Part shown: positions 5,216-64,000 of the stretch, one piece after another | Position numbering within the stretch: position 1 is the stretch's first letter | How the letters are laid out: the number at the start of each line of letters is the position of its first letter | NCBI GenBank assembly: GCA_002269645.1 | Contig: NIVC01000001.1 | Span: 1,178,001-1,242,000, forward strand | DNA: 64,000 nt | Reading direction: 5' to 3' | Origin: Macrostomum lignano | Lineage: Eukaryota | Position numbers and translations under genes: made by a program | Notes under the pieces: model-generated | Seen by the model: the letters and a program-made list of their open reading frames with translations, nothing else | What the model was told of the DNA's origin: nothing | The model's database searches: none

Positions 5216-11237
<6,022 letters not shown>

Positions 11238-18299: not shown

Positions 18300-19431
18300 T
18301 TTATTCTAGTATCTGTGGTCAAACCCTGGCTTTGTCATTGCTAAGCAGTGTGGCGGCTCACGGAATCGAACCAAAGTCGAAAGCCTATTTTATAGCATAA
18401 GTAAAAAATGACAATTGGCTTCCCATAAATTCTGCCCGACCTATCCGCCCAAATTAGGGAAAGTTATCAATGAATCGACATTTCTTTAAGAAGAAAATCG
18501 TACTCGTAATAGCTACGGCATGACACCCCGAATTGCTTGTGAAAATGTATTCAGAGCACGTACTGCTACGAGCATAAAAATATATTCCGACTTCATGGAG
18601 GCCCGAGTATAATAGAAGTACATTGTCAGCACTGCAATTCTAGCGTCCAGCAGCTTGAGTAGACAATGAGCTACGTGATTAAAACAATGGTAGATTAGTG
18701 TGTAGCTGAGTTAAGTAATGGCCGAAATACGATCGCGCGTTTCCTGCCTATTGTTTAACAAAGCTGCGCTGTACATTTACTCGTTTTTCGCTCAGCAAAG
18801 AAGTCATTATTCCACGCTCATTTCACGCTGATGCATAGTTAAGGAGGGGAGGTTAGTTACTACAGGTGTGAAAGCAGTCGCATGAGGAACTGCGTACATG
18901 GGCAGCAACTGCAAAATAATGGGAGGGGCAAAACTAATTGCTCTTGTGTCCAGGTGAAAAGCATTTCATGTCAAAGATGACAAAGAATAAGCGTGTGAAG
19001 TTTTGTGTGTCTTTGCTTTTAAACTGTTTATCGTTTTAAATTTGTTTGTTAATACACAAAACTTGGTACAACCCTCGTCGTTACCATAGTTGCCTGGAAA
19101 CAAACTACGCCTCGGCACCATAGCCATATGTCCCTGATCCAAAGTCTGTCTTACAGTCTGCTCAACTACAGTTGCTTCTAGCATGAGCTTGTCTAGAGCA
19201 GAGTAAATAATCTGCCTGCATATCATATGACATTAAATAGCCAGGCTTGACAAAATTAGTAAGCAGCCTCCTTAGATGCCTCCTTCTTTGCGCCTAAGAA
19301 TCACTGTCTGCAGCTCTGATAGTCATTAAAATAATTCGATTTCTGCTTATGCAGCTTCAGTTTTCTGCCTTTAATTATCCTATTCTGATCCAGCAAGCAA
19401 GGATTAATAATAATATAGTCCTGAATTCACA

Positions 19432-20560
19432 TGGGCTAGATTAGCAATCCATTCTATTCCTGCATCCTTGTGGGCTAGATTAGCAATCCATTCTATTCCT
19501 GCATCCTTGTGGGCTAGATTAGCAATCCATTCTATTCCTGCATCCTTGTGGGCTAGATTAGCAATCCATTCTATTCCTGCATCCTTGTGGGATAGATTAG
19601 CAATCCATTCTATTCTTGCATCCTTGTGGGCTAGATTAGCAATCCATTCTATTCTTGCATCATTGTGGGCTAGATTAGCAATCCATTCTATTCCTGCATC
19701 CTTGTGGGCTAGATTAGCAATCCATTCTATTCTTGCATCCTTGTGGGCTAGATTAGCAATCCATTCTATTCCTGCATCCTTGTGGGCTAGATTAGCAATC
19801 CATTCTATTCCTGCATCCTTGTGGGCTAGATTAGCAATCCATTCTATTCTTGCATCCTTGTGGGCTAGATTAGCAATCCATTCTATTCTTGCATCCTTGT
19901 GGGCTAGATTAGCAATCCATTCTATTCCTGCATCCTTGTGGGCTAGATTAGCAATCCATTCTATTCCTGCATCCTTGTGGGCTAGATTAGCAATCCATTC
20001 TATTCTTGCATCCTTGTGGGCTAGATTAGCAATCCATTCTATTCCTGCATCCTTGTGGGCTAGATTAGCAATCCATTCTATTCCTGCATCCTTGTGGGCT
20101 AGATTAGCAATCCATTCTATTCTTGCATCCTTGTGGGCTAGATTAGCAATCCATTCTATTCTTGCATCCTTGTGGGCTAGATTAGCAATCCATTCTATTC
20201 CTGCATCCTTGTGGGCTAGATTAGCAATCCATTGTATTCCTGCATCCTTGTGGGCTAGATTAGCAATCCATTCTATTCCTGTATCCTTGTGGGCTAGATT
20301 AGCAATCCACTCTATTCCTGCATCCTTGTGGGCTAGATTAGCAATCCATTCTATTCCTGCATCCTTGTGGGCTAGATTAGCAATCCATTCTATTCTTGCA
20401 TCCTTGTGGGCTAGATTAGCAATCCATTGTATTCCTGCATCCTTGTGGGCTAGATTAGCAATCCATTCTATTCTTGCATCCTTGTGGGCTAGATTAGCAA
20501 TCCATTCTATTCTTGCATCCTTGTGGGCTAGATTAGCAATCCATTCTATTCTTGCATCAT
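19432..20560. repeat. 39-bp satellite array just upstream of XPG
   Basis: Unit TGGGCTAGATTAGCAATCCATTCTATTCCTGCATCCTTG; explains ORF 19468..20571. Confidence 0.95.
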
Positions 20561-20666
20561 TATTAGTGTAAACAACTGAAGATTGTCAGTTGATATTCTC
20601 AAGAGTTTCCGATCACTCTACAGCCCAGCATGCGTCACTATTTACCGTTCCAGCTCTCGAGTCCGC

Positions 20667-27951
<7,285 letters not shown>

Positions 27952-28171: not shown

Positions 28172-29478
28172 GCAGATTAGCAATCCACTCTATTCCTGCA
28201 TCCTTGTGGGCTAGATTAGCAATCCATTGTATTCCTGCATCCTTGTGGGCTAGATTAGCAATCCATTCTATTCCTGCATCCTCGTGGGCTAGATTAGAAA
28301 TCCATTATATTCCTGCATCCTTGTGGGCTAGATTAGCAATCCATTCTATTCCTGAATCCTTGTGGGCTAGATTAGCAATCCATTCTATTCCTGCATCTTT
28401 GTGGGCTAGATTAGCAATCCATTATATTCCTGCATCCTTGTGGGCTGGATTAGCAATCCATTCTATTCCTGCATCCTTGTGGGCTAGATTAGCAATCCAT
28501 TCTATTCCTGAATCCTTGTGGGCTAGATTAGCAATCCATTCTATTCCTGCATCCTTGTGGGCTAGATTAGCAATCCATTCTATTCCTGAATCCTTGTGGG
28601 CTAGATTAGCAATCCATTCTATTCCTGCATCCTTGTGGGCTAGATTAGCAATCCATTCTATTCCTGCATCCTTGTGGGCTAGATTAGCAATCCATTCTAT
28701 TCCTGCATCCTTGTGGGCTAGATTAGCAATCCATTATATTCCTGCATCCTTGTGGGCTAGATTAGCAATCCATTATATTCCTGCATCCTTGTGGGCTAGA
28801 TTAGCAATCCATTCTATTCCTGCATCCTTGTGGGCTAGATTAGCAATCCATTCTATTCCTGAATCCTTGTGGGCTAGATTAGCAATCCATTCTATTCCTG
28901 CATCCTTGTGGGCTAGATTAGCAATCCATTATATTCCTGCATCCTTGTGGGCTAGATTAGCAATCCATTCTATTCCTGCATCCTTGTGGGCTAGATTAGC
29001 AATCCATTCTATTCCTGAATCCTTGTGGGCTAGATTAGCAATCCATTCTATTCCTGCATCCTTGTGGGCTAGATTAGCAATCCATTCTATTCCTGCATCC
29101 TTGTGGGCTAGATTAGCAATCCATTCTATTCCTGCATCCTTGTGGGCTAGATTAGCAATCCATTCTATTCCTGAATCCTTGTGGGCTAGATTAGCAATCC
29201 ATTCTATTCCTGCATCCTTGTGGGCTAGATTAGCAATCCATTATATTCCTGCATCCTTGTGGGCTAGATTAGCAATCCATTCTATTCCTGCATCCTTGTG
29301 GGCTAGATTAGCAATCCATTATATTCCTGCATCCTTGTGGGCTAGATTAGCAATCCATTCTATTCCTGCATCCTTGTGGGCTAGATTAGCAATCCATTCT
29401 ATTCCTGCATCCTTGTGGGCTAGATTAGCAATCCATTCTATTCCTGCATCCTTGTGGGCTAGATTAGCAATCCATTAG
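28172..29478. repeat. 39-bp satellite array just downstream of XPG
   Basis: Same unit and orientation as 19432-20560. Confidence 0.95.
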
Positions 29479-30275: not shown

Positions 30276-31897
30276 TCAGGAAGTGCCAGGCTTGGTCTCA
30301 GTGAAGCTGGTGTGCCCAGTAGACTTGGCGTGCTGTCTGGCCTCAGCTTCTCCCCTCAGATAGACGCCGCAGTCGCCGCATCGCAGCTGAAATTTCGACA
30401 TGTCGGTGAACTGGCCGGCCGACTTGGCCTCCTTGCCGAGCTCCAGAGCTTTGGCGTCCACCGGTTCGTCGCTAACTGGAAATCGAGTTGTCAATCCGCC
30501 TGCGCCTTCCAGGGTTTCCATGGCAACAGCGTCGTAGTGAATGCCGTCGTAGATAAGGAAGATTTTATGGACGGCATTCTCGGCTGGGTAGGAGTCCATG
30601 CGGCCCGTCTGGGTGTCGATAACGTTGATTTGAACGCCGAGCCGGCGGCACAGAATCGACAGCTCAATGGCGCCGCCCCAGCTGTTTGGCGACAGAATCC
30701 ACTGGCAGTAGGCGGGGTTCTCGCGGTCCAGGAAGGCGGCCGTGTAGGTGGCCGGGTCCGCTGACACCTGGTGCGATCGTGGGAGGCGTTGCGGTGACTT
30801 TTAATGAGTTGTGTGGATTGGGAAGAATCCGTAACAGCATGGGAAGAATCTGTGAAGCAGGAAGAATCTGTGAATCAGGAAGAATCTGTGAATCAGGAAG
30901 AATCCGTAACAGCATGGGAAGAATCTGTGAATCAAGAAGAATCTGTGAAGCAGGAAGAATCTGTGAATCAGGAAGAATCTGTGAATCAGGAAGAATCTGT
31001 GAATCAGGAAGAATCTGTGAATCAGGAAGAATCTGTGAATCAGGAAGAATCTGTGAATCAGGAAGAATCTGTGAATCAGGAAGAATCTGTGAATAAGGAA
31101 GAATCTGTGAATCAGGAAGAATCTGTGAATAAGGAAGAATCTGTGAATATGGAAGAACATGTGAATCAGGAAGAATCTGTGAATAAGGAAGAACATGTGA
31201 ATCAGGAAGAATCTGTGAATAAGGAAGAATCTGTGAATATGGAAGAACATGTGAATCAGGAAGAATCTGTGAATAAGGAAGAACATGTGAATCAGGAAGA
31301 ATCTGTGAATCAGGAAGAATCTGTGAATCAGGAAGAACATGTGAATCAGGAAGAACATGTGAATCAGGAAGAATCTGTGAATCTGAAAAAAATGTGAATA
31401 AGGAAGAACCTAAATCAGATTTCAGCACAGCAGGGCAGCCTCACCGCTTGCGCAATGGCCTGCCGCATTGGAGCAGCTGAGTCTAGATCAACCGCAGCCC
31501 GATTAGACACGCAGAAGTCGATAGCCAGGAACAGGCAAGAGTTATTAGCCGGGATAGTTTGCACAGAGAGAAACCCGGCTCCGGACTCAACTTGGCTGCT
31601 CAGCACCGAGTCCAATTGAGCAGCTTTCTCTCGCTGCCACTGAGTGCTCCGTTTAGCTTCAACAATGAGAGCCTCGCCGCTGGTCAGGCCCAGACTGGAC
31701 AGAGTGCTGGCTGGCTGGCTCAGGTCCAGCGGCTTGGGCGGGTAGCCGAATTTCACGTGCAGCTCGTGATCCCGGCCGATCTTGGCCGCTGAGTAGATTG
31801 CTTCGGCTAAGTCGCCGGCCGAACTGCCGGGCGTCAGGCTGTCCAGCGTCACCTGGCCGCCTGTGCTGATGCGACAACGAAGGCGCAGAGCCGCCAT
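30276..31897 (-). CDS. YOD1: OTU deubiquitinase OTU1/YOD1 (UBX-like domain, OTU, C2H2 zinc finger)
   Basis: Exons 31897-31445 and 30767-30276, phase 0. MAALRLRCR, KFGYPPKPL, PANNSCLF (catalytic Cys), WGGAIELSIL, GIHYD (His), CGDC..HAKSTGH. Confidence 0.93.
30815..31410. repeat. 18-bp minisatellite in the YOD1 intron
   Basis: AATCAGGAAGAATCTGTG. Confidence 0.9.
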
Positions 31898-31954
31898 TAA
31901 GGTGTGACTGTCGGTTGCTGAAACACGGGTAGAAAAGGTCAAAAGGGGCAGGCA

Positions 31955-32435
31955 GTTCACTGAATGGTCAGATGAGGCTGGCACTTCATTGAATGGTTAG
32001 AGGAGACTGAAAGTTCACTGAATGGTCAGAGGAGGCTGGCACTTCACTGAATGGTCAAAGGAGGCTGGCACTTCATTGAATGGTTAGGAGACTGAAAGTT
32101 CACTGAATGGTCAGAAGAGGCTGGCAGTTCACTGAATGGTCAGAGGAGGCTGGCACTTCACTGAATGGTCAGAGGAGGCTGGCACTTCATTGAATGGTTA
32201 GAGGAGACTGAAAGTTCACTGAATGGTCAGAGGAGGCTGGCAGTTCACTGAATGGTCAGAGGAGGCTGGCACTTCATTGAATGGTTAGAGGAGACTGAAA
32301 GTTCACTGAATGGTCAGAGGAGGCTGGCAGTTCACTGAATGGTCAGAGGAGGCTGGAAGTTCACTGAATGGTCAGAGGAGGCTGGAAGTTCACTGAAAGG
32401 CTAGAAGAGGCTGGCAGTTCACTGAAAGGCCAGAG
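31955..32435. repeat. ~29-bp minisatellite
   Basis: TTCACTGAATGGTCAGAGGAGGCTGGCAC. Confidence 0.9.
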
Positions 32436-33804: not shown

Positions 33805-36549
33805 CTGGAAATTAGCGATTGAAAATTTTAGATCATTCTATCCTGGTAATTTTTTAAACTATTTCCATTGGAACTACAAGCAAGAGGCTACCCTGTTATA
33901 ATCTACTTTGTATATTATAAAAGAGTAATAAGGCTTTTAGTTAGTTAAGTTTTTAGAGACAAAAAAACAATGTGTAATTTGGCCAAATGATGATAGCTAG
34001 CTAGGTTAAATTGTTATCAGATCCAAAGAGAACAACTCTGATATATATTTAAAATCTTATAAGTTATAACCCATATCTTTAAATGATCATATATCAATAC
34101 ATAATAGGCCAATATAAAAAGCAAAGTCATATATAAGAATGCAAAGTTATCATTTAAGATGAAAAATATTGCCACCAAAATTTGCATCAGTTAATACCAA
34201 CCTATAGCTTTTTGCCAAAATCAATGGTTGCTAGAATAGACATGATTATAACAAGCATAGGCATAGGTCTAGATATATACTCTTAAACTAAAGGGTTATA
34301 CCTATTTGTTGATATTTAATTTGTTAATAGGCCTAAAAATAAAATATAAGCAATTGGTAGAAGTCAAATTTGTCAATATAAAACTATTTGAACAAATTTG
34401 TCAACGAGGTAGACTTATTTAAAGTTATTTTTTAACTTATGCTAGTATTAATAAATTAATAGATGTTGATGAATTTGGTGGCACTTAGTGTTTGGAGCAA
34501 CATATAATGCAAATTTTTGTACCTACTGAACATTTTTATGCCTTAGTTTTTTAGAGGTTTATATGCAGCTATATTGCATGCATAACTAGATAAAAAAGCC
34601 ACCCATTTAATAATCTGCTTTCTATTTGCTATAACACTATAACATTTGCTATAACAACCACAAAAGAAGAGCAAAAACCAATTTTTCTTTCCATGAAATT
34701 TAAATTGGAATTTTTTGGTTGTTTTTTTGTTTTGGCTAGCTGTTTTATATTATTACATAAATGGTCACAAAGTAGAAACACAAGCTAGTTTAGTCATATC
34801 CTAACCCTAAAGCCTAAACAACATTCTAGAAAATTATTTGTTCTTTGAGGATTTTTGGCAGCTTGCTTACAAGAATCAAGGCAATATCCAAGCTAGCCAT
34901 TTTATCAGCTAATACATCTTCCATTTCAGCACTTCCTCAATAACTTGCTAGGCTTTTTCATCTCTTGCTTTTGAAAGTTTTTATGTTTTTTTACATATGG
35001 ATTTAATCTTTTTCTCATAGTTTTTAATGGCACCCAGTGGCTTTCAATGCACTATGACTAACGCTAAGCAGCAGCTGATTTGCTGACCCTTTCTCTTTTA
35101 GCTTTGTCTTCTCCTTCTCAACTAGCTTCTTTTTAAGACTAGGAATTTGTTTACACTTACAGTCTTGCTCTTCCACTTGAACTTCCAGAATGTTTTCAAT
35201 TTTCTAGCAAAATGGAAATTTGACTAGGCCTAATATTTTGTGCCACTCAGGGGTACAATAATTTATACCATTATTTTACATTTTGTGCATTTGCACCTGC
35301 TAGCACCAGATTTGTGCCTGGCAGAAATTTGTGCCTCACTCCAAATACTGGTCACAGTAAGTTGTAACAACATTGATGTCAACAAAAGATAGAAAGAGCA
35401 AAGGTGATAGTTTTGAGCTTTTTGGAAGAAAAGAAAACTTAAGGAATTGAGTATTTGGTATAGCTACATTTATTTACAGTAATGTATTATATATAACTGG
35501 AAAATTCTGGAAGTTTCATTAATTAAAACAAAGTGAATTGCATTCAATACTAATGTGTAATGTAATTTTACAATAAAAATACATTATTAAATTTGACTAG
35601 GCCTAGTACAAATTATGTATGACTATAGTCAGGATTTTAAAGTAAAATTAATATTTAATTAAATTAAAAGAAATTTATAGAATGAACTTTAACTTTGCAC
35701 TAAAAAGTATTTTCTAAAGATTCTATTCTAAAAATAAATCTAGTGTAGTGTACATGTGCTTTCTAAATTTGAATATGCTTTATACTACAATTTTGATAAT
35801 TTTGACTTTGATTGTTAAATATCCTAGGGACGTAAGCTTTCTAGAACCAAAAATGGTCAAGATTTTCATAATTCATAGTGAAACACAATACAAGTTTTGG
35901 AATTATTATTATTACATTAAATCATACAACACAAAATTAATTAAGTACTAACATGCGCAACTGCTGTAATGTAATTGTAGAGTAGTAGTAGTAAGTTTGG
36001 CTCAGGCAGGAAGCCTGTTTGGCCAGTATGAGTCAGTGTATTTAATAAAAATTCAAAAGTAGAAGGAAAACCAAGTGCATAAGTAGTTTTGCAATAATAT
36101 AGTATTTGAAAGAGCGCCTTAATTTTTCTATGAAACTTCGAATAATTTTTTGTAGATTTGTTTCCTATAAATTAGTTTGAACTTAACATTAAAATAAATA
36201 TTAATTCTAAGTCTACCTAAGTTTGTATAAGCACCTGTACTTCGTAAAAAATCTTTTTTAGTCATATAATTAAACTTTATAAGCTGTTATGTTTGCTGAT
36301 CGACATTTAGTATCAATAGTAAATTAAAAAATTCAAATCGACTCGACGAGGGAAGCTATATATATAGCTTTCAGACTGCTTTTTAAGAAGCTTCCTAGTT
36401 TTGCTCTTTATCTTTGACTTTGCCTTTGCCACTGTAAGGCTTTCCACACACACACACACAATTATAAATTAAGCATAAAAATCCAGACTATTGCATTAGA
36501 ACTAGCTATCATTGATTTTATCTTTTTCGTGAATAAAATCTTCTCAGCT

Positions 36550-37071
36550 ATGGATTCTTTATCGCTTCCAAGTGCTGTTCTTCACATAGTTAAAGCACTC
36601 GGTCTTCAGCCATTACCAATGGAAGGAGGATTCTATAAGGAAATGTTCCGAAGCCATAATACTGTGTCTTTCGCTGATTCTCTCCATGCTACAAGCACAA
36701 ACATCTACTATCTAATAACCAGCTCGCAATTTAGCCGTTGGCACAAGCTGCTTCAGGACGAAACCTGGTCCTATCTTGGAGGCACTTCAACAGCTACAAT
36801 GGATTTGATTTCACCTGATGGAAACCATAGTCAGGTCTTTTTTGGTGAATTGAATCGAGTGGCTCACAACAGCAGCAGCACACGGCAGCACACTCTATGC
36901 TTTACTGTGCCTGCAAAAACTTGGTTTACTGTACATTGTGATTCTACTGCTGAAGACACCTATGCACTCTTTTCGTGTGTTTGTGCACCTGGTTTTGAGT
37001 TCTCAGATGCTGAGTACTCTGACTCAGCTGCTTTGAGTAGAATTTTTCCAAACTGCAATGATATTTGTTAA
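36550..37071 (+). CDS. Intronless cupin_5/DUF985 (YML079W-like) protein
   Basis: LGLQPLPMEGGFYKEMFRS, STNIYYLI, FSRWHKL..DETW, FTVPAKTWF, YALFSCVCAPGFEFSD. ATG at 36550. Confidence 0.85.
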   Translation: MDSLSLPSAVLHIVKALGLQPLPMEGGFYKEMFRSHNTVSFADSLHATSTNIYYLITSSQFSRWHKLLQDETWSYLGGTSTATMDLISPDGNHSQVFFGELNRVAHNSSSTRQHTLCFTVPAKTWFTVHCDSTAEDTYALFSCVCAPGFEFSDAEYSDSAALSRIFPNCNDIC

Positions 37072-41465: not shown

Positions 41466-46341
<4,876 letters not shown>

Positions 46342-54420: not shown

Positions 54421-54764
54421 CTGAGAAGAGATCGAGGATACTGATGTAGAGGATACATATAATGTAAAAAAGCAGCAAAGCAATGAGACACGGTAAGATT
54501 GCAACATATATTACAGACGATAAACTTTATGTTAAAATTGTACCGTTTGAAATGAGGATTTGCGCGCGGCACAAAGGTGTGCATCAGCAAAGTATGATTA
54601 TTATTATTAACAATATTTTCGTAAAATAAAATGCAACACTTGCATTGCACTGCGCATACAGAGGCATTGTGAACCGAACCAATTTGCGCAGAAATTTTAT
54701 AAGCAAAAATACCAACAAGGTTTACACTCTTATGGACCAATTTATGTCGATGTGCAAAACCCGC

Positions 54765-55243
54765 CTAACAGGTGGGATAATAATCCTCAATGGGATAGCC
54801 CATATTCTAACAGGTGGGATAATAATCCTCAATGGGATAGCCCATATTCTAACAGGTGGGATAATAATCCTCAATGGGATCACACTTGTCTAAACAGATG
54901 GGATAATAATCCTCAATGGGATCACACTTGTCTAAACAGATGGGATAATAATCCTCAATGGGATCACACTTGTCTAAACAGATGGGATAATAATCCTCAA
55001 TGGGATCACACTTGTCTAAACAGATGGGATAATAATCCTCAATGGGATCACACTTGTCTAAACAGATGGGATAATAATCCTCAATGGGATCACACTTGTC
55101 TAAACAGATGGGATAATAATCCTCAATGGGATCACACTTGTCTAAACAGATGGGATAATAATCCTCAATGGGATCACACTTGTCTAAACAGATGGGATAA
55201 TAATCCTCAATGGGATCACACTTGTCTAAACAGATGGGATAAT
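54765..55243. repeat. 42-bp minisatellite, array 1
   Basis: AATCCTCAATGGGATCACACTTGTCTAAACAGATGGGATAAT. Confidence 0.92.
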
Positions 55244-55292
55244 GAAAGATTATTAAACGCCTATTTTGTGTAGAAATCATGAGACAATAATA

Positions 55293-55927: not shown

Positions 55928-56537
55928 AATAATCCTCAATGGGATCACACTTGTCTAAACAGATGGGATAATAATCCTCAATGGGATCACACTTGTCTAA
56001 ACAGATGGGATAATAATCCTCAATGGGATCACACTTAATCTAACAGGTGCGATAATAATCCTCAATGGGATCACACTTGTCTAAACAGGTGGGATAATAA
56101 TCCTCAATGGGATCACATTTAATCTAACAGGTGCGATAATAATCCTCAATGGGATCACACTTGTCTAAACAGGTGGGATAATAATCCTCAATGGGATCAC
56201 ATTTAATCTAACAGGTGCGATAATAATCCTCAATGGGATCACACTTGTCTAAACAGGTGGGATAATAATCCTCAATGGGATCACACTAGTCTAAACAGAT
56301 GGGATAATAATCCTCAATGGGATCACACTAGTCTAAACAGATGGGATAATAATCCTCAATGGGATTACACTTGTCTGAACAGGTGGGATAATAATCCTCA
56401 ATGGGATTACACTTGTCTGAACAGGTGGGATAACAATCCTCAATGGGATTACACTTGTCTGAACAGGTGGGATAACAATCCTCAATGGGATTACACTTAA
56501 TCTAACAGGTGGGATAATAATCCTCAATGGGATCATA
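55928..56537. repeat. 42-bp minisatellite, array 2
   Basis: Same unit and orientation as 54765-55243. Confidence 0.92.
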
Positions 56538-56680: not shown

Positions 56681-57013
56681 TCAGGGCAGGAAGGCCGGCC
56701 TGATGACCCACTCGGGGGTGCCGGCAGGAATCGGTCGCTGACTCCGGGTGGCCTCGTCGCGGACGCACTTGCCGAGCTGGGCGCGCTGCTTCACCGTGGC
56801 AAAGCGGCGCATGAACGCCTCGTCAAGGCTCCGCTTGATGTCGCGCACCCGGTCAGACTCCCAGGCCAGACAGCGGACTCGCAGCGTCTCGTCCTCTTCT
56901 TCCTCATCTGATGAGGTCAGATCGCGGGTGAGCACGATTCGGTACTGCTCAAGATCGTCAGGCGACAGGTTCGGCAGCAGAGTCTCGAAGGCCTTCTGAC
57001 GGCGGCTCAGCTT
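56681..57013 (-). CDS. Constant terminal exon of a C14orf93-like protein
   Basis: Acceptor CCTAAATATGCAG|AAG, phase 0. KLSRR..LSPDDLEQY..LTSSDEEEE..LRVRCLAWESDRV..LD..RSQRPIP..PEW resembles the C14orf93 C-terminal domain (recalled, not aligned). Confidence 0.72.
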   Translation of the reverse strand, partial: KLSRRQKAFETLLPNLSPDDLEQYRIVLTRDLTSSDEEEEDETLRVRCLAWESDRVRDIKRSLDEAFMRRFATVKQRAQLGKCVRDEATRSQRPIPAGTPEWVIRPAFLP

Positions 57014-57264
57014 CTGCATATTTAGGTGCAGGAATGTAGAGAAGCGGCATGAACTACTGTAAGTAGCGAAATTGAATTTTACATATTTTCAGAAATTTTA
57101 CTTCATAAAATCTTTCCAAACAGCTGAAATTGATAAATATTAGGTGTTAAATTGACGGCGCAAAATCCGACAGTGTGGAATCTGGCACAAACTAGGTAGG
57201 CCATGGTGAATGACCACAGAATGATCCTTTTGATGAGTATCAATAAATTCAATGATATTGCTGA

Positions 57265-57790
57265 TTGAGTAGCGGAGCTCACTCAGGGACATTGGGGATT
57301 GAGTAGCGGAGCTCACTCAGGGACATTGGGGATTGAGTAGCGGAGCTCACTCAGGGACATTGGGGATTGAGTAGAGGTGCTCACTCAGGGACATTGGAGA
57401 TTGAGTAGAGGTGCTCACTCAGGGACTCACTCAGGGACATTGGGGATTGAGTAGCGGTGCTCACTCAGGGACATTGGGGATTGAGTAGCAGAGCTCACTC
57501 AGGGACATTGGGGATTGAGTAGCAGAGCTCACTCAGGGACATTGGGGATTGAGTAGCGGAGCTCACTCAGGGACATTGGGGATTGAGTACCCAGAGCTCA
57601 CTCAGGGACATTAGGGATTGAGTAGCGGAGCTCACTCAGGGACTCACTCAGGGACATTGGGGATTGAGTACCCAGAGCTCACTCAGGGACATTGGGGATT
57701 GAGTACCCAGAGCTCACTCAGGGACATTGGGGATTGAGTACCCAGAGCTCACTCAGGGACATTGGGGATTGAGTAGCAGAGCTCACTCAG
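57265..57790. repeat. 34-bp minisatellite
   Basis: GAGTAGCGGAGCTCACTCAGGGACATTGGGGATT. Confidence 0.9.
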
Positions 57791-57824
57791 ACTCTCCAAC
57801 CAGTAAGTAGCAAGACCCTCTCAC

Positions 57825-57910
57825 CCGCTTCCATCTGCCACTCTTTGCAGCAGACTTTCTACGCACAATAATCCACTTAAGTTCGTAAGCAAAGTATTTT
57901 GAAATATTGC
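57825..57910 (-). CDS. Variant cassette exon (86 nt, phase 1->0)
   Basis: TTTTCAG|GC...CGG|GTGAGA; NISKYFAYELKWIIVRRKSAAKSGRWKR. Confidence 0.75.
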
Positions 57911-58124
57911 CTGAAAATTGAATTATCAGAATTAAACTATTTTCAAGCAGAGTATAAAAAGCAAAAAACTTACAATACTATTCAAGCGAGTTTGCCATGT
58001 CAGCCCAAAAGAGCTACGTTTAATTTTTTTATATTTAATAAGACTTGATGGCACAATAATTTTTTGGTAGATCATTTTAAGTTTCAGTACTACTTGCATT
58101 AGTAAATGTGTATGCAGAAGATGG

Positions 58125-58620
58125 AAACAGTGTACAGTAAGGGAAGACTCAGTGTCAATGTACATTGGTGGGGCTTGTGCCAGTTCAGCGGGGGAAGAGA
58201 GACAGTGTACAGTAAGAGAAGGCCCAGTGTCAATGTACATTGGTGGGGCTTGTGCCAGTTCAGCGGGGGGAAGAGAGACAGTGTACAGTAAGAGAAGGCC
58301 CAGTGTCAATGTACATTGGTGGGGCTTGTGCCAGTTCAGCGGGGGGAAGAGAGACAGTGTACAGTAAGAGAAGGCCCAGTGTCAATGTACTTTGGTGGTG
58401 GTTGTGCCAGTTCAGCGGGGGGAAGAGAGACAGTGTACGGTAAGGGAGGGCCCAGTGTCAATGTACATTGGTGGGGCTTGTGCCAGTTCAGCGGGGGAAG
58501 AGAGACAGTGTACGGTAAGGGAGGGCCTAGTGTCAATGTACATTGGTGGGGCTTGTGCCAGTTCAGCGGGGGAAGAGAGACAGTGTACAGAAAGTCGAGG
58601 CCCAGTGTCAGTGTACACTT
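58125..58620. repeat. ~76-bp minisatellite
   Basis: GACAGTGTACAGTAAGAGAAGGCCCAGTGTCAATGTACATTGGTGGGGCTTGTGCCAGTTCAGCGGGGGGAAGAGA. Confidence 0.9.
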
Positions 58621-58688
58621 GAAAAAAAATCTAGTCAAAAACCGATCTGGAAGGATGCCTTGTGGCTGTTTTAAATTCTCATAATTAC

Positions 58689-58783
58689 CGACTTCACTCG
58701 ATAAGAGCGCCAGGCACGCCTTCGCTTATCCATAACAAATTTTCTCTCCGAGTCAAATGACGTCTTCATCTTGTCGCTGGCAG
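58689..58783 (-). CDS. Variant cassette exon (95 nt, phase 1->0)
   Basis: TTCCCCCAG|CT...TCG|GTAATT; ASDKMKTSFDSERKFVMDKRRRAWRSYRVKS. Confidence 0.72.
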
Positions 58784-58897
58784 CTGGGGGAATCGATTTG
58801 TAATAGATAATAACACAAATAAAATTTACAGTGGGAAACTAAAGCTTAGCAAGGGCAGGGATTGACAGAGACAGGCAGCTTAAGACAGGCGACTGAC

Positions 58898-58983
58898 CAC
58901 GCGCAATCGGGCAGACTTTCTGGCTGTCCGCCGGTTGTACAAAATCATATGGGCCAATCGGCTGTGAAAAATTTCCACGTTAG
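58898..58983 (-). CDS. Variant cassette exon (86 nt, phase 1->0)
   Basis: TATTTTAG|CT...GTG|GTCAGT; NVEIFHSRLAHMILYNRRTARKSARLRV. Confidence 0.78.
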
Positions 58984-59059
58984 CTAAAATAATTATAATA
59001 GCAATATAATTCATATACTCAAACAGATAACTGCAGTAAATTAGCGCACAAGTCCACAC

Positions 59060-59160
59060 CGAAAATGCTGCTGCCTTAAAAAGCGCTGCAATATGAATTT
59101 GATAATTCCTATCGTCCAAATTTTGAATAATGCTGTTTTTAGCTTGCAAGTGGGAGATGG
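59060..59160 (-). CDS. Possible divergent variant exon (101 nt, phase 1->0)
   Basis: CTTATAG|CC...TCG|GTGTGG; ISHLQAKNSIIQNLDDRNYQIHIAALFKAAAFS. Phase fits but it lacks the basic pattern. Confidence 0.35.
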
Positions 59161-59276
59161 CTATAAGCATTGAAAATGAATTAAATGGAAATTGTCATTG
59201 AAACCTTCAAAACCTCCAGGAACTCCATCTCCGCACACACAGTGCACATCGCAGACATCGCTATCAATAGAATCAC

Positions 59277-59681
59277 AGACTATGCCACCCAGGCATATTC
59301 AATACATATTTAGCAAAACAGCTTTCTACTTTCAGTTCAGTAGCAAACAAGAATACATAAGCTATTTTATAAGAATAAAGGCGGCTGAAATGACTGATAA
59401 ATTTAGAAGCCCAAGCTTGCAGGCGTAAACAGCTTGCTAATTAGTTAAGCAATGATGTACATTAGCCAGTCCACTGAAATGTTCACTGAAATGTCCACTG
59501 AAATCCACTGAAATGCTTTAGGCTGGAATTCCGAGAAAGTCAATAAAATTGGGCGTCTTAAGCTAGGGGGGTAAGAGCCAATAAATAAGCCTTGGCTTTA
59601 AAAATAGCATAAAATGCTTCAGTTTAACTTCCTACTGAACTGAAAGTAGCTTACACGAAATGTGCTGAGTGGCCCATCTAG
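59277..59681. mobile_element. MITE-like element, copy 2, inside the exon array
   Basis: Colinear with 17931-18299: CTACTTTCAGTTCAGTAG, GGCTGGAATTCC, GGGGGTAAGAGCCA, CTGAAAGTAGCTT..GCCCATCTA. Confidence 0.7.
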
Positions 59682-59763
59682 TTCTTATCTATCTCACGTA
59701 GATCTTTGGTGCACACACAGACAAACTGGCAGGCCACACACATCTTTCAACACAGGCACTAAC

Positions 59764-59849
59764 CACGCGGAGTCGGCCAGCTCGTTTAGCAGTTCTCCGA
59801 TTAGACAATACAATATTGCCCAGCCGCCTGTGGAACTGTTCTGTGCTGG
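59764..59849 (-). CDS. Variant cassette exon (86 nt, phase 1->0)
   Basis: TATTTTAG|CC...GTG|GTTAGT; STEQFHRRLGNIVLSNRRTAKRAGRLRV. Clear paralog of 58898-58983 with many third-position differences. Confidence 0.78.
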
Positions 59850-60044
59850 CTAAAATATTTCATGAGAAAATTTTTATATATGCATATATGCTAATGTATA
59901 GATCTGCTTTAAAAAGCAAATTAGCAGAATGCTGTCACAGTGCTGCCAAAAAACGCTGCTGCTTTTTTTATTTTAAAAAAAATTGCATGGTACAGTCGTG
60001 TTTTACACTGCTTCAGAGGCCAGGGACCACTGGAAGGTCAGATG

Positions 60045-60415
60045 TTCAGGACTAACCAAGCTGTTCAGCCTCAGGTACTCAGGACTAACCTAGCTGTTCA
60101 GCCTCAGGTACTCAGGACTAACCTAGCTGTTCAGCCTCAGGTACTCAGGACTAACCTAGCTGTTCAGCCTCAGGTACTCAGGACTAACCTAGCTGTTCAG
60201 CCTCAGGTACTCAGGACTAACCTAGCTGTTCAGCCTCAGGTACTCAGGACTAACCTAGCTGTTCAGCCTCAGGTGTTCAGGACTAACCTAGCTGTTCAGC
60301 CTCAGGTGCTGAGGACTAAACTAGCTGTTCAGCCTCAGGAGCTCAGGACTAACCTAGCTGTTCAGCCTCAGGTGTTCAGGACTAACCTAGCTGTTCAGCC
60401 TCAGGTGCTGAGGAT
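60045..60415. repeat. 33-bp minisatellite
   Basis: TCAGGACTAACCTAGCTGTTCAGCCTCAGGTAC. Confidence 0.92.
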
Positions 60416-60458
60416 TTCTAGAATTAATCAAAACGTCCTACTAAAATAAGCAGCTTAC

Positions 60459-60544
60459 ACTTTTTGTTCTGAACCATTTCTTAGCACTTTTGCGATGCTT
60501 CTCAATGGCAATGCGCTGAGCAGTGAACCAGGCGGAGCAAGTCT
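60459..60544 (-). CDS. Variant cassette exon (86 nt, phase 1->0)
   Basis: TTAAACTAG|AG...AGT|GTAAGC; TCSAWFTAQRIAIEKHRKSAKKWFRTKS. Confidence 0.78.
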
Positions 60545-60689
60545 CTAGTTTAAAAAAGTTATTAAGGTAAAAAAAAACTTTTAAAAAGACGACGCTAAAA
60601 ACCAAGGCCTATTCACAACCATAGCGTCAAAGAGGTTTCAACAGAAACAAACAGATTTCACCCCATACTACTACAAGTAGGCAGCTTAC

Positions 60690-60784
60690 ATTACGAATTC
60701 GACCGGATTTTTTTGCACTTTTACGATTTCTCTGCACTGTAACGCTCTGCGATTGAAACCACGTGAGTAGCCTGTCCGTCAGCT
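60690..60784 (-). CDS. Variant cassette exon (95 nt, phase 1->0)
   Basis: GCGTCAG|AG...AAT|GTAAGC; LTDRLLTWFQSQSVTVQRNRKSAKKSGRIRN. Confidence 0.76.
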
Positions 60785-60932
60785 CTGACGCGTCATTAAA
60801 ATATTGTTCGATAAAGCTGGTTGAATAAAAATTAGCTAATTCTGAGAAATTATAAACATCGCGTTGTAGAGGCTTGCGTGCAATAGAAAATATTGAAAAA
60901 AAGTTTTTTATTTAAAAAAACCAGGAATTTAC

Positions 60933-61018
60933 TGTTTTCCATCGTTTGGATCGTTTGGCACTGATTCTATGCTTAGCCATGGTGACGCCCTGGGTGACAA
61001 AATATCTATTGATTGCGC
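60933..61018 (-). CDS. Variant cassette exon (86 nt, phase 1->0)
   Basis: TCCGTCAG|GC...ACA|GTAAAT; AINRYFVTQGVTMAKHRISAKRSKRWKT. Confidence 0.78.
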
Positions 61019-61124
61019 CTGACGGATTGCGGCGGGGTGTTGCACTTTTAAAAACACTTATTTAACAAAATAAACAGCTAACAGAAATATAGTACGCGTT
61101 GGAGAGGCAATTTTCACAACTTAC

Positions 61125-61210
61125 AGCCTTTTGCCTGTTACTCTTGCGCCAAATTAATCTGGATCGCAAACTAGATTGCTGCAGGAAACCGTATTCCTTC
61201 TGACACGTGG
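61125..61210 (-). CDS. Variant cassette exon (86 nt, phase 1->0)
   Basis: CTCACGCAG|CC...GCT|GTAAGT; TCQKEYGFLQQSSLRSRLIWRKSNRQKA. Confidence 0.72.
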
Positions 61211-61431
61211 CTGCGTGAGTGCGGAATATTTGTTTCTTAGAATTTATATTTAAACTATCGTTTGTTATAACTTACTTTAATAAAACAAACCTATGATCTC
61301 AAAATAGCTGGTTTCACAAACTCTCAAACCTAGTTCACTATTGATTCGATTTTATAAATGTAATTTTAGAAAAAAATCTATTGTTTCGAAGTTTCCGGAT
61401 ATTGTAATCTCTTAATTGTAGATCACTTAAG

Positions 61432-62265
61432 CGTCTGTCTAAATGCACATAGGGTTGAGACTAGGGTCTGTTTAAATGTACATAGGGTTGGGACTAGGGT
61501 CTGTTTAAATGTACATAGGGTTAGGACTAGCGTCTGTCTAAATGTACATAAGTGTTGAGGGTGATGACTAGCGTCTGTCTAAATGTACATCGGGTTGGGG
61601 GTGATGACTAGAGTCTGTTTAAATGTACATAGGGTTGGGGGTGATGACTAGGGTCTGTTTAAATGTACATAGGGTTGGGGTGATGACTAGGGTCTGTTTA
61701 AATGTACATAGGGTTGGGGTGATGACTAGGGTCTGTTTAAATGTACATAGGGTTGAGGGTGATGACTAGCGTCTGTTTAAATGTACATAGGGTTGGGGGT
61801 GATGACTAGCGTCTGTTTAAATGTACATAGGGTTGGGGGTGATGACTAGGGTCTGTTTAAATGTACATAGGGTTGGGGGTGATGACTAGGGTCTGTTTAA
61901 ATGTACATAGGGTTGGGGTGATGACTAGCGTCTGTCTAAATGTACATAGGGTTGGGGGTGATGACTAGCGTCTGTCTAAATGTACATAGGGTTGGGGGTG
62001 ATGACTAGCGTCTGTCTAAATGTACATAGGGTTGGGGGTGATGACTAGCGTCTGTCTAAATGTACATAGGGTTGGGGGTGATGACTAGCGTCTGTCTAAA
62101 TGTACATAGGGTTGGGGGTAATGACTAGCGTCTGTCTAAATGTACATAGGGTTGGGGGTGATGACTAGCGTCTGTCTAAATGTACATAGGGTTGGGGGTA
62201 ATGACTAGCGTCTGTCTAAATGTACATAGGGTTGGGGGTAATGACTAGCGTCTGTCTAAATGTAC
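61432..62265. repeat. 40-bp minisatellite
   Basis: ATGACTAGCGTCTGTCTAAATGTACATAGGGTTGGGGGTG. Confidence 0.92.
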
Positions 62266-62711
62266 TTAAGCCGGAAAGCAGAAAATTACAGAATTCTAGA
62301 ATACTTAAAAGACGGTCACGTGATTCTACGATCTGGAAACCTCAACAAAAGATTTTTTTTAAATACACGACTGATTTTTTAAATAGATTTTCCATCTTAC
62401 TTGCGCACCTTTCTAATCATCTTTGAATTTCTTAAACTGGATTCCCCCAGCATTAAATATCGACCTGATTGACTGACTTTTTTAAACTATCAGGTTAGCT
62501 AGTATCTTAAATATAACGAGATTTATAGCATTAGCAGAAGTCTACAAAATCGGAGCGCATTTTACTATTATTATCACTAATACGCTCGTATAATACAATT
62601 TGTGGGACAATAAAAATGACTACAACATTGAAGCCAATGCACAGAGGCCTGGTGAAACCCCGGTTCCAGCAACTCGCTTGGCATGCTAAATCAATCGGAG
62701 CCGAGAAAAAC

Positions 62712-62797
62712 CATTGTTCGCCTGTAAAATTTGGCCACATTCCTACGATTAGACAGAACTGGCTGCCTATACTGTAAGTAGACGGAGCTTAGCACGG
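62712..62797 (-). CDS. Variant cassette exon (86 nt, phase 1->0), weak donor
   Basis: TATTTTGCAG|CC...ATG|GTTTTT; VLSSVYLQYRQPVLSNRRNVAKFYRRTM. Shares VLSNRR with 59764-59849. Confidence 0.55.
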
Positions 62798-62894
62798 CTG
62801 CAAAATAGGCGATTGTGAGTGCCGAGAGATGCTCAGCTGTGCTGCTGCGACTGGGCTTGCGTTGCTTAATGTCTGATTGGCACTGCGGCTTGGC

Positions 62895-63435
62895 CCAGTG
62901 GGAGGCTGGCCCAGCAACTGACACTCTGGGAGGCTGGCCCAGCAACTGACACTCTGGGAGGCTGGCCCAGCAACTGACACTCTGGGAGGCTGGCCCAGCA
63001 ACTGACACTCTGGGAGGCTGGCCCAGCCAACAACTGTGGATCTGGGAGGCTGGCCCAGCAACTGAGGATCTGGGAGGCTGGCCCAGCCAGCAACTGTGGA
63101 TCTGGGAGGCTGGCCCAGCAACTGAGGATCTGGGAGGCTGGCCCAGCAACTGACACTCTGGGAGGCTGGCCCAGCGACTGAGGATCTGGGAGGCTGGTGG
63201 CCCAGCAACTGAGGATCTGGGAGGCTGGCCCAGCCAGCAACTGTGGATCTGGGAGGCTGGCCCAGCAACTGAGGATCTGGGAGGCTGGCCCAGCCAGCAA
63301 CTGTGGATCTGGGAGGCTGGCCCAGCAACTGAGGATCTGGGAGGCTGGCCCAGCCAGCAACTGTGAATCTGGGAGGCTGGCCCAGCCAGCAACTGTGAAT
63401 CTGGGAGGCTGGCCCAGCAACTGAGGATCTGGGAG
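62895..63435. repeat. 28/32-bp minisatellite
   Basis: GGGAGGCTGGCCCAGC(CAGC)AACTGAGGATCT. Confidence 0.9.
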
Positions 63436-64000
63436 GGGGCCCATGTACACGTAAGTCTAGTATTCGTTATTAAAGTCTGTCTAAATCTGCAGATTTTTAA
63501 GAAGTGTTGCAAGCATAACGCAAAACTCAAATCGAAATCCAACAGCAAACATGAGAGCCAACAAGCCTACACCAACTGACGCTAATATAGTATAGTTGGA
63601 GAAAACGACAAACAAAATGTTAAATTTATAATTTTAGGGAAAAATTAATTAGGATAATTAATGCATACAATGGGCCGCACTTCTTGAACAGCCGGGACGC
63701 CAAAGTTCTGGCGCAGTGGGAGTCTGCACACCAATTTTAGAACCAAGTAGTATATGTAGCTCAATATAAATTGCATTGACTCAATCATTTTTTACGATTA
63801 TAAATCTGAGACACCTGGGCAGCGGCAGTTATAATTAATTTTAAGCGATTTTTACGGCAGACTTGCAAACACTCGCTGGTTTCTTTCTTTCTCTGTAAAC
63901 CTCTGCAACGCTATAGCTTAATAATTCAATTGAATACGCGGCACTATAAGTTCATTTAAATAGACATGTTCCGTACAGGTAAGAAATGCACTAAATATTT

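What the first reader, a model, noticed from the sequence alone, without database searches (positions are those of the whole stretch)
56681..62797. Dscam-like array of mutually exclusive exons diversifying a basic helix in a C14orf93-like protein
Seen in sequence (minus strand, mostly invisible to the ORF track): nine small open exons with AG/GT ends at 62797-62712, 61210-61125, 61018-60933, 60784-60690, 60544-60459, 59849-59764, 58983-58898, 58783-58689 and 57910-57825. Seven are exactly 86 nt and two are 95 nt, and all are phase 1->0. Each fits one shared terminal exon (57013-56681, KLSRRQKAF...), but no two can be joined in frame. Their peptides align, with aromatic residues near positions 5-6, Arg at 17, often S/T-A at 19-20 and a basic end: AINRYFVTQGVTMAKHRISAKRSKRWKT, TCSAWFTAQRIAIEKHRKSAKKWFRTKS, NISKYFAYELKWIIVRRKSAAKSGRWKR, STEQFHRRLGNIVLSNRRTAKRAGRLRV, NVEIFHSRLAHMILYNRRTARKSARLRV. 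Established: Dscam uses mutually exclusive exon clusters, and lola and mod(mdg4) splice variable DNA-binding domains. Inference: the joined product resembles the C14orf93 C-terminal region (ACVAYF...RR...MSDEE...LD), so this locus may make 9 or more isoforms differing only in a putative DNA/RNA-recognition helix. I know of no such array described in this family. The upstream constant exon was not found and probably lies beyond 64000.
Basis: partly seen in the sequence, partly recalled or inferred. Interest (0 to 1): 0.93.

Follow-up and report, generated by a model that had tools for sequence, protein, structure and literature searches.

The report
Flatworm gene with nine swappable exons
The 3' half of an uncharacterised Macrostomum lignano (flatworm) gene holds nine tandem copies of one small exon, of which exactly one must be spliced in to make the full protein, so the gene can produce up to nine versions differing only in a basic helix; this is a large alternative-exon array of a known kind, in an animal group and protein family where none has been described.

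Summary
All nine minus-strand segments have AG/GT ends, are 86 or 95 nt long, are open only in phase 1->0, and join in frame to the terminal exon at 57013-56681.

The window is Macrostomum lignano (Mlig_3_7, NIVC01000001.1). RNA-seq-derived gene models for this gene show three splice patterns:
- constant exon -> cassette 61210 -> terminal exon
- constant exon -> cassette 61018 -> terminal exon
- all cassettes skipped, which shifts the frame and truncates the protein

Including one cassette is productive in 9 of 9 cases. Including 0, 2 or 3 never is.

All nine cassettes are intact in two other genomic copies. They carry fewer substitutions than their intron flanks and no indels in the cleaner copy (L008). 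Paralogues hold arrays of 1, 2, 3 and about 6 cassettes, also with single-cassette isoforms. An oyster homologue has one exon of the same phase class.

AlphaFold places the cassette inside one long basic helix of a confident domain with no PDB match.

There is no C14orf93 or Pfam signal, no evidence for nucleic-acid binding, and no docking/selector RNA signal. RNA evidence covers only 2 of the 9 cassettes.

Verdict: a real mutually exclusive exon array, a new member of a known kind.

The parts
62798..64000 (-). 3' part of the intron between constant exon 3 and the first cassette. Exon 3 lies outside the window and ends 17 nt beyond 64000. The intron contains a 28-nt-unit minisatellite at 62899-63443.
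   Evidence: The window is 100% identical to L009, with window 64000 = L009 11520. Exon 3 ends at L009 11503, TGG CGC A|GTAAGT. Minisatellite.
62712..62797 (-). Cassette 1 (86 nt, T+VLSSVYLQYRQPVLSNRRNVAKFYRRTM). The weakest member, with a GTTTTT donor.
   Evidence: AG/GT ends and a single open frame. Best non-training candidate of 2,645, but only E=0.24. Intact in L007 and L008 with 1 substitution. No RNA-based model uses it.
61125..61210 (-). Cassette 2 (86 nt, T+TCQKEYGFLQQSSLRSRLIWRKSNRQKA). Probably the ancestral type.
   Evidence: Used alone, joined to the terminal exon, in P0001, P0088 and P0138. tblastn gives 100% identity over the 28 cassette residues. 50% identical to the single cassette of paralogue P0003/L001. 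The two substitutions against L007/L008 are both synonymous.
60933..61018 (-). Cassette 3 (86 nt, S+AINRYFVTQGVTMAKHRISAKRSKRWKT).
   Evidence: Used alone in the GenBank RNA-based models P0133 (L007) and P0135 (L008). Their CDS ends lie 7 nt into the terminal exon, giving GKQS*. Leave-one-out E=2e-3.
60690..60784 (-). Cassette 4 (95 nt, K+LTDRLLTWFQSQSVTVQRNRKSAKKSGRIRN).
   Evidence: leave-one-out E=4e-7. Intact in L007 and L008.
60459..60544 (-). Cassette 5 (86 nt, K+TCSAWFTAQRIAIEKHRKSAKKWFRTKS).
   Evidence: E=1.4e-3. Intact in L008; 1-nt gap in L007.
59764..59849 (-). Cassette 6 (86 nt, T+STEQFHRRLGNIVLSNRRTAKRAGRLRV).
   Evidence: E=2e-5. Identical in L007 and L008. The AlphaFold model of this isoform has pLDDT 94.7, with the cassette inside helix 2-43.
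58898..58983 (-). Cassette 7 (86 nt, T+NVEIFHSRLAHMILYNRRTARKSARLRV). The closest relative of cassette 6 (54% aa identity).
   Evidence: E=1.4e-4. Identical in L007 and L008.
58689..58783 (-). Cassette 8 (95 nt, T+ASDKMKTSFDSERKFVMDKRRRAWRSYRVKS). Divergent.
   Evidence: Leave-one-out E=0.16 and 0.056, the best non-training candidate. Identical in L007 and L008.
57825..57910 (-). Cassette 9 (86 nt, S+NISKYFAYELKWIIVRRKSAAKSGRWKR).
   Evidence: E=3e-4. Resembles the unannotated cassette L005 9089-9174 of paralogue P0002, ACRSQFINETKWIGIRRRSAARCNKLKQ.
56681..57013 (-). Shared terminal coding exon (phase 0, KLSRRQKAF...PAFLP*, stop at 56683-56681). It encodes the rest of the long helix and the conserved alpha/beta C-terminal domain.
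   Evidence: Conserved across 80+ homologues. The oyster homologue has a 333-nt terminal exon starting at the same KL.

Best explanation
This is the 3' half of a Macrostomum lignano gene (GenBank BOX15_Mlig025180g1 on NIVC01000001.1; full product like UniProt A0A1I8HID5). It belongs to an unnamed protein family.

The ancestral gene had one penultimate exon: phase 1->0, length 2 mod 3, encoding the first ~28 residues of a long basic alpha-helix. That state is still seen in oysters and in the paralogue at L001. In this gene the exon has been duplicated in tandem to nine diverged copies.

A productive mRNA carries exactly one copy between constant exon 3 and the terminal exon. Zero, two or three copies shift the frame and give either a premature stop or a protein lacking the C-terminal domain. 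The gene can therefore make up to nine isoforms, identical except for about 28-31 residues of one helix.

Shown here:
- homology of the cassettes;
- the frame logic;
- conservation of the cassettes across genomic copies;
- two different single-cassette isoforms and one skipped isoform in RNA-based models;
- arrays in paralogues;
- helical placement of the cassette.

Inferred:
- that most of the other seven cassettes are used;
- that the variable, strongly basic, small-residue-rich C-terminal half of the cassette is an exposed binding surface whose specificity differs between isoforms;
- that exclusivity is enforced mainly by frame and mRNA surveillance rather than by a dedicated RNA switch.
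For: Anatomy and frames.

Homology among cassettes.

Identity of the locus.

RNA-based provenance of the GenBank models: StringTie/TACO plus de novo transcripts (PMC5730564).

Isoforms of this gene:
- exon 3->61210->terminal in P0001, P0088, P0138;
- exon 3->61018->terminal in P0133, P0135;
- all cassettes skipped in P0136, P0137, matching the predicted frameshift peptide exactly.

Paralogues:
- L002 has two cassettes (95 and 77 nt), each used alone by P0004 and P0098 respectively.
- L003 has about 6 candidates, two of them used alone (P0104, P0005).
- L005 has 3 and L001 has 1.
- P0110 is a skipped form.

Purifying selection, window against copy L008: 7/792 exon substitutions against 33/1066 in 60-nt flanks (p=0.001), and 0 against 28 indel columns (p=2e-7). 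All AG/GT sites are kept.

Ancestral single exon in oyster: 110 nt, phase 1->0.

Structure: the cassette sits in helix 180-228 of the full protein at pLDDT above 90. The isoform with cassette 59849 scores pLDDT 94.7 and pTM 0.85.
Against: - RNA-based models support only 2 of the 9 cassettes. No reads could be examined.
- The model at the window's own locus skips all nine.
- Cassette 62797 has marginal homology and a weak donor.
- The genomic copies differ by only about 1-3% in unique sequence, so the selection test rests on few changes (4 synonymous, 3 non-synonymous).
- L007 carries 1-nt gaps in two cassettes. These may be assembly errors or real decay.
- AG/GT-flanked open segments of this size are common by chance.
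- No docking/selector signal was found.
- The protein's function is unknown.
Confidence: 0.72

Rival explanations
1. Only two or three cassettes (61210, 61018, perhaps one more) are live alternative exons. The others are decaying relics of exon duplication that the spliceosome ignores.
For: RNA-based models exist only for 61210 and 61018. 62797 has a weak donor and marginal homology. L007 has 1-nt gaps in two cassettes. Open AG/GT segments are common by chance.
Against: The cassettes share only 14-54% aa and about 30-60% DNA identity, yet all nine keep one open frame, a length of 2 mod 3, AG/GT ends and invariant R17/R25. Against L008 they have no indels, where flanks have 28 indel columns. 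Cassette types recur in paralogues, for example 57910 and L005 9089. The annotation pipeline kept only dominant isoforms (isoform-frac 0.75), so absence from the models says little.
Confidence: 0.18
2. The regulated event is mainly on/off: include any cassette to make full-length protein, or skip all to make a truncated protein without the C-terminal domain. Under this reading the cassettes are functionally redundant.
For: The skipped form is the annotated product at two genomic copies of this gene (P0136, P0137) and occurs in a paralogue (P0110). Its stop lies in the last exon, so by the usual exon-junction rule it would escape NMD (the rule is established knowledge).
Against: Redundancy would not explain why nine strongly diverged sequences are maintained, why several paralogues keep distinct cassette types, or why conserved anchor positions alternate with variable ones.
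Confidence: 0.08
3. Chance open segments or fragments of dispersed repeats with no shared gene.
For: The structural criterion alone is expected about 5 times in the locus. The locus is rich in minisatellites.
Against: Leave-one-out homology. Two cassettes sit in annotated spliced products with the shared terminal exon. None of the cassettes overlaps a tandem repeat.
Confidence: 0.01

Closest known systems
Arthropod mutually exclusive exon clusters (Dscam1 exons 4/6/9, Mhc, MRP/ABCC, 14-3-3 zeta)
   Same: Tandem arrays of homologous exons of equal or near-equal length and the same phase. One is chosen per mRNA, and the choice swaps a defined structural segment of the protein.
   Different: - Here the lengths are 2 mod 3, so the frame alone enforces exclusivity. 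Dscam cassettes preserve the frame and rely on docking/selector RNA pairing, for which no clear signal was found here.
- Different phylum (flatworm).
- Uncharacterised intracellular-looking protein rather than an Ig receptor.
- Arrays recur with different sizes (1, 2, 3, about 6, 9) across paralogues.
Vertebrate tandem-duplicated exon substitutions (e.g. SCN-alpha exon 5a/5b, ATE1 7a/7b; abstracts listed)
   Same: Origin by tandem exon duplication, homologous substitution of a protein segment, and ancient intron positions.
   Different: Those are nearly all pairs. This is a nine-member cluster and a lineage-specific expansion.
lola / mod(mdg4) variable C-terminal modules
   Same: One constant part combined with alternative variable parts.
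   Different: In lola and mod(mdg4) whole alternative 3' terminal modules are used (zinc fingers/FLYWCH, some by trans-splicing). Here the variable exons are internal and share one terminal exon.
C14orf93 (RTFC / 4931414P19Rik)
   Different: There is no detectable Pfam or profile similarity. The papers found describe C14orf93 as a secreted factor and thyroid gene (abstracts), not a nucleic-acid binder.
Uncharacterised oyster proteins (e.g. Crassostrea angulata LOC128156365, C. virginica LOC111121825)
   Same: True homologues of the C-terminal module: basic helix, KLxxR, acidic S/D/E patch, WES...LD, and a P..W C-terminus. The terminal-exon start is the same, and the penultimate exon has the same phase class.
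   Different: A single penultimate exon, with no array.

Membership tests
Mutually exclusive exon (MXE) cluster derived from tandem exon duplication | Two or more adjacent exons that are homologous to each other | tested here: met
   Leave-one-out profiles recover six cassettes at E<=2e-3. The other three are each the top non-training candidate among 2,645.
Mutually exclusive exon (MXE) cluster derived from tandem exon duplication | Same splice phase and compatible length, with canonical splice sites at each copy | tested here: met
   All are AG/GT and phase 1->0, at 86 or 95 nt. These features are conserved in two other genomic copies.
Mutually exclusive exon (MXE) cluster derived from tandem exon duplication | Mature transcripts contain exactly one member of the cluster | tested here: inconclusive
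   Met for two cassettes through RNA-seq-derived gene models: 61210 (P0001/P0088) and 61018 (P0133/P0135). An all-skipped form also exists. Reads could not be examined for the other seven, or for double inclusion.
Mutually exclusive exon (MXE) cluster derived from tandem exon duplication | Joint inclusion or complete skipping is non-productive (the frame/NMD type of exclusivity) | tested here: met
   1 cassette: 9/9 productive. 0 cassettes: frameshift. 2 cassettes: 0/36. 3 cassettes: 0/84.
Dscam-type docking site / selector sequence mechanism | One intronic docking site complementary to a selector next to each variable exon | tested here: inconclusive
   The best candidate 12-mer (TGTTTGGAAAGA, in the last intron) pairs with flanks of 6/9 cassettes against 2-4 in shuffles. 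It is purine-rich and pairs with polypyrimidine tracts. The region upstream of exon 3 was not scanned.
C14orf93 protein family (Pfam family model) | Significant match to the family's profile, or retrieval of named C14orf93 proteins by a profile search | tested here: not met
   No Pfam hit for the joined isoforms at E<=1, for 85 family members at E<=0.01, or for 10 members at E<=10. The profile search returns no C14orf93-named protein.
Nucleic-acid-binding basic-helix proteins (e.g. bZIP-like) | Profile or fold similarity to a known DNA/RNA-binding domain | tested here: not met
   No Pfam hit. Foldseek against PDB and BFVD gives best E of about 0.4-1. The PDB sequence-profile search returns only designed helical repeats. 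Binding itself cannot be tested with these tools.

The most novel reading that the evidence does not exclude
The whole Macrostomum family forms a combinatorial recognition repertoire. It has at least 15 paralogues, several in tandem, with arrays of 1 to 9 cassettes. Dozens of alternative basic helices would be grafted onto one conserved, structurally novel domain. Cell-type-specific or stochastic cassette choice would then set different nucleic-acid or protein targets, making this a non-arthropod, intracellular analogue of Dscam-style isoform diversity.
Probability: 0.12. Interest if true: 0.85.

Novelty: new member of a known kind. Interest (0 to 1): 0.6.

Why it matters
Large mutually exclusive exon clusters of five or more members are, to my knowledge, essentially an arthropod speciality. 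A nine-member cluster in a flatworm would be an independent case of this diversification strategy, especially as smaller clusters recur across paralogues of the same family.

The gene family is also uncharacterised. Its C-terminal domain is confidently predicted, shared with molluscs, and matches no Pfam family or PDB fold. The array marks one helix of that domain as the part evolution varies, which gives a concrete starting point for working out what the family does.

M. lignano is a transgenic, RNAi-amenable model (PMC5730564), so the prediction can be tested directly.

There is a practical point too. GenBank annotates the window's own locus only as the frameshifted, cassette-less form, and two sister loci as truncated products. 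The gene is therefore mis-represented in current annotation.

Tried and rejected
- Word-indexed homology search with a joined isoform found nothing. The exhaustive HMMER search was needed.
- Exact-protein look-up of the terminal-exon ORF and of P0001 found nothing on record.
- Pfam on isoforms and on the family gave no family. This rejects the C14orf93 label at the level testable here.
- Foldseek of both models against PDB and BFVD, and a profile search against PDB sequences, found no relative.
- The docking/selector complementarity scan was inconclusive. Inspecting cassette flanks by eye showed only local similarity between the donors of 60784 and 60544.
- Paralogue loci L004 and L006, and the middle tandem gene on L009, could not be resolved into clear arrays.
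- UniProt auto-names of family members (CUT, BEN, ARID, PDZ, FHA and others) were considered as hints of variable DNA-binding fusions. I rejected them because the sequences are ordinary family members with no Pfam support.
- Literature searches found no prior description.

Full report
**1. Observation.**

Reading the minus strand from 64000 to 56400 and extracting the nine claimed segments confirms every coordinate.
- Each segment has AG immediately upstream and GT immediately downstream.
- Seven are 86 nt and two are 95 nt.
- Only the frame corresponding to phase 1->0 is open. The other two frames carry stops in 9/9 and 5/9 segments.
- Each segment joins in frame to 57013-56681 (KLSRRQKAF...PAFLP*).

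The aligned peptides share invariant R17 and R25. Positions 2, 5/6, 13/14 and 20 are hydrophobic, with A20 nearly invariant. Positions 18, 21, 22 and 27 are basic, and positions 19 and 23 are small.

**2. Is it more than chance?**

The structural criterion by itself is weak. AG|86 nt open in phase|GT occurs about once per kb per strand in this window, so about 4.9 are expected in the locus against 11 seen. The support comes from homology.
- Leave-one-out profiles against the six-frame window recover 61018, 60784, 60544, 59849, 58983 and 57910 at E = 4e-7 to 2e-3.
- With a broader profile that includes paralogue cassettes, the left-out 58783 (E 0.056), 61210 (E 0.093) and 62797 (E 0.24) are each the best non-training candidate among 2,645 AG/GT candidates on both strands. 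The next candidates score E = 0.8-2.
- No other cassette exists elsewhere in the window.
- None of the cassettes overlaps the intronic minisatellites.

**3. What gene is it?**

Pfam finds nothing in the joined products, and the word-indexed search finds nothing either. An exhaustive HMMER search with the nine aligned isoforms gives 87 hits. The top hits are all Macrostomum lignano.

The window is 100% identical over 12 kb to GCA_002269645.1 contig NIVC01000001.1 (locus L009, with window 64000 = L009 11520). On L009 the gene has this structure:

| Feature | L009 coordinates |
|---|---|
| Exon 1 | 10001-10624 |
| Exon 2 | 10878-10946 |
| Exon 3 | 11410-11503 |
| Cassette array | between exon 3 and the terminal exon |
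| Terminal exon | 18507-18839 |

Exon 3 ends TGG CGC A|GTAAGT, which is phase 1, 17 nt beyond the window end.

**4. RNA-based isoforms of this gene.**

The GenBank annotation of this assembly derives from a genome-guided transcriptome: StringTie/TACO plus de novo transcripts, with isoform-frac 0.75 and then de-duplication (PMC5730564). Three splice patterns appear.

1. P0001, P0088 and P0138 (UniProt entries) read ...AEVWR-T-TCQKEYGFLQQSSLRSRLIWRKSNRQKA-KLSRRQKAF.... This is exon 3 -> cassette 61210 -> terminal exon. It skips 62797 and the seven downstream cassettes.
2. P0133 (PAA82238, locus L007) and P0135 (PAA68648, L008) read ...AEVWR-S-AINRYFVTQGVTMAKHRISAKR..., which is exon 3 -> cassette 61018.
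   - Their CDS ends (L007 13502, L008 19608) lie 7 nt into the terminal exon.
   - The odd C-terminus GKQS* is exactly GGA AAA CA|A AGC TGA, meaning 61018 spliced to 57013 but read out of frame.
   - In L007 the cause is a 1-nt gap inside 61018. In P0135 the shift appears to begin in exon 3 (...AVS-RALQQTLKFGA against ...AVSG-IAANAEVWRS). I inferred that from the peptide, not from the DNA.
3. P0136 and P0137 (P0137 is the model at the window's own locus) end ...AEVWR-KAEPPSEGLRDSAAEPVA*. This is exactly the product of exon 3 joined directly to the terminal exon.

The junction residues T and S predicted from A+CC and A+GC match the models.

**5. Frame logic.**

| Cassettes included | Productive combinations | Outcome |
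|---|---|---|
| 1 | 9/9 | Reaches the natural stop |
| 0 | 0 | Frameshift, stop 53 nt into the last exon |
| 2 | 0/36 | 22 have a stop before the last junction; 14 hit TGA at nt 5-7 of the terminal exon |
| 3 | 0/84 | All have premature stops |

Exclusivity at the protein level is therefore built into the exon lengths.

A scan for a shared docking site complementary to the cassette flanks was inconclusive. Introns between neighbouring cassettes are 106-1501 nt. In my judgement that is too long for steric exclusion, although I did not compare it with M. lignano's minimal intron size.

**6. Conservation.**

Two further genomic copies, L007 and L008, are colinear with the window at about 88-92% identity overall. 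All nine cassettes keep AG/GT, length and frame in L008. L007 has single-base gaps in 61018 and 60544.

| Window against L008 | Cassettes | 60-nt flanks | p |
|---|---|---|---|
| Substitutions | 7/792 | 33/1066 | 0.001 |
| Indel columns | 0/792 | 28/1066 | 2e-7 |

Four of the exon changes are synonymous and three are not. Deep divergence between cassettes (14-54% aa identity) combined with retained frame and anchor residues argues for long-term constraint.

**7. Family context.**

M. lignano has at least 15 paralogues. Three of them sit in tandem on this contig.

| Locus | Paralogue | Cassettes | Single-cassette isoform evidence |
|---|---|---|---|
| L001 | P0003 | 1 (86 nt, 50% identical to 61210) | - |
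| L002 | P0004/P0098 | 2 (95 and 77 nt) | Each used alone, by P0004 and by P0098 |
| L005 | P0002 | 3 (86, 86, 77 nt) | One resembles 57910 |
| L003 | P0005/P0104 | About 6 candidates (101, 86, 110, 95, 110, 77 nt) | Two used alone, by P0104 and P0005 |

All lengths are 2 mod 3. P0110 is a skipped, frameshifted form of another paralogue.

Outside flatworms, the C-terminal module occurs in oysters as 'uncharacterized protein LOC...' and in many anonymous fragments. The module is a basic helix, KLxRR, an acidic SSDEE patch, RVRxLxWES...LD, and ...P..W. The Crassostrea angulata gene has a single penultimate exon of 110 nt, phase 1->0, followed by a 333-nt terminal exon starting KL. The exon architecture is therefore old, and the array is an expansion in the flatworm lineage.

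**8. Structure and function.**

AlphaFold2 with a 68-sequence alignment gives pLDDT above 90 for residues ~125-323 of P0088. The cassette (about residues 186-213) lies inside one helix, 180-228, which starts in exon 3 and ends in the terminal exon. A small alpha/beta unit follows.

The C-terminal module carrying cassette 59849 instead models at pLDDT 94.7 and pTM 0.85, with the cassette in helix 2-43. The cassettes are therefore structurally interchangeable.

The N-terminal half of the cassette carries the conserved hydrophobic stripe. The C-terminal half is strongly basic with small residues. I infer that the first half anchors the helix to the domain and the second half is an exposed, variable binding surface. 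The ligand, whether nucleic acid or an acidic partner, is unknown.

Foldseek against PDB and BFVD and a PDB sequence-profile search found no relative.

**9. The C14orf93 claim.**

No Pfam family of any kind matches the family. No protein named C14orf93 is retrieved by the profile search. The papers found describe C14orf93/RTFC/P19 as a thyroid-related, secreted factor (abstracts). The label is not supported here. A very remote relationship cannot be excluded without an HMM-HMM comparison.

**10. Verdict.**

This is a real array of tandemly duplicated alternative exons that behaves as a mutually exclusive cluster. It swaps about 28-31 residues of a basic helix in a conserved but uncharacterised domain.
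- RNA-level proof exists for two cassettes and for skipping.
- Use of the remaining seven is inferred from conservation.
- It is a new member of a known kind of system.
- No prior description was found in the literature held.

Noticed in passing
window 56681-64000 (= NIVC01000001.1, L009 11520-18839): GenBank annotates this locus (BOX15_Mlig025180g1, PAA94808) only as the cassette-less, frameshifted 274-aa product. Two sister loci are annotated as truncated products caused by 1-nt frameshifts. None of the nine cassettes is annotated at the window's own locus.
   Followed up: yes
L007 (copies of cassettes 61018 and 60544): Single-base gaps sit inside two cassettes in one genomic copy only. These could be PacBio assembly errors or real decay of that copy; I could not tell which.
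   Followed up: partly
L009 1-8470, upstream of the window's gene (outside the window): Three family paralogues lie in tandem in the same orientation: the P0038 gene, a middle gene, and this gene. The middle gene has 4.2 kb between its exon-3 equivalent and its terminal exon, with only weak cassette candidates.
   Followed up: partly
window 57263-57790, 58127-58617, 60046-60414, 61430-62265, 62899-63443; also 56000-56535 and 54752-55280: Five of the array's introns each hold a different minisatellite, with units of 28-76 nt at 84-98% identity. A 42-nt-unit array lies just 3' of the gene (56000-56535), and repeat-derived ORFs with the same peptide motif at 54752-55280 suggest a second block of it. 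Minisatellites are abundant throughout the window, for example at 8634-9542, 19468-20571, 22774-23642 and 28204-29478. Whether they promote exon duplication or affect splicing is unknown.
   Followed up: no
window 60690 and 60459 (donor flanks): The donors of cassettes 60784 and 60544 are followed by similar sequence, GTAAGCTGCCTACTTGTAGTAG and GTAAGCTGCTTATTTTAGTAGG. A related CTACTTACAGTAG lies 50 nt upstream of the terminal exon. This may be a remnant of the duplication unit or a regulatory element.
   Followed up: no
UniProt entries of the family: WormBase-ParaSite-derived UniProt entries for ordinary family members carry unrelated automatic names: CUT, BEN, ARID, PDZ, FHA, Ras-GEF, Rab-GAP, DDT, 'DNA-directed DNA polymerase'. 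Pfam supports none of them in the sequences checked, so the names look unreliable.
   Followed up: partly
P0138 (UniRef A0A1I8G3J9, 885 aa): One model of this gene (cassette 61210 isoform) runs from ...PAGTPE straight into about 550 residues that look like a retroelement ORF. This suggests an insertion at the 3' end of another genomic copy, or a mis-join.
   Followed up: no
window 6139-46341: Other genes in the window by Pfam: Rubicon-homology-domain protein (10296-11237, +), rhodopsin-type GPCR (15122-16381, -), XPG-like nuclease fragment (26585-27247, +), OTU1/YOD1-like deubiquitinase (30276-31984, -), Cupin_5/DUF985 (36529-37071, +), and a polo-like kinase (42092-46341, -).
   Followed up: partly
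cassette residues 16-25 (all nine cassettes): The motif N/H-R-[RK]-[ST]-A-[KR]-[KR]-S-x-R, with its small residues on a basic helix, reminds me of bZIP basic regions. That is my recollection only. Pfam bZIP models do not hit, and no zipper follows: the helix ends at a proline.
   Followed up: partly
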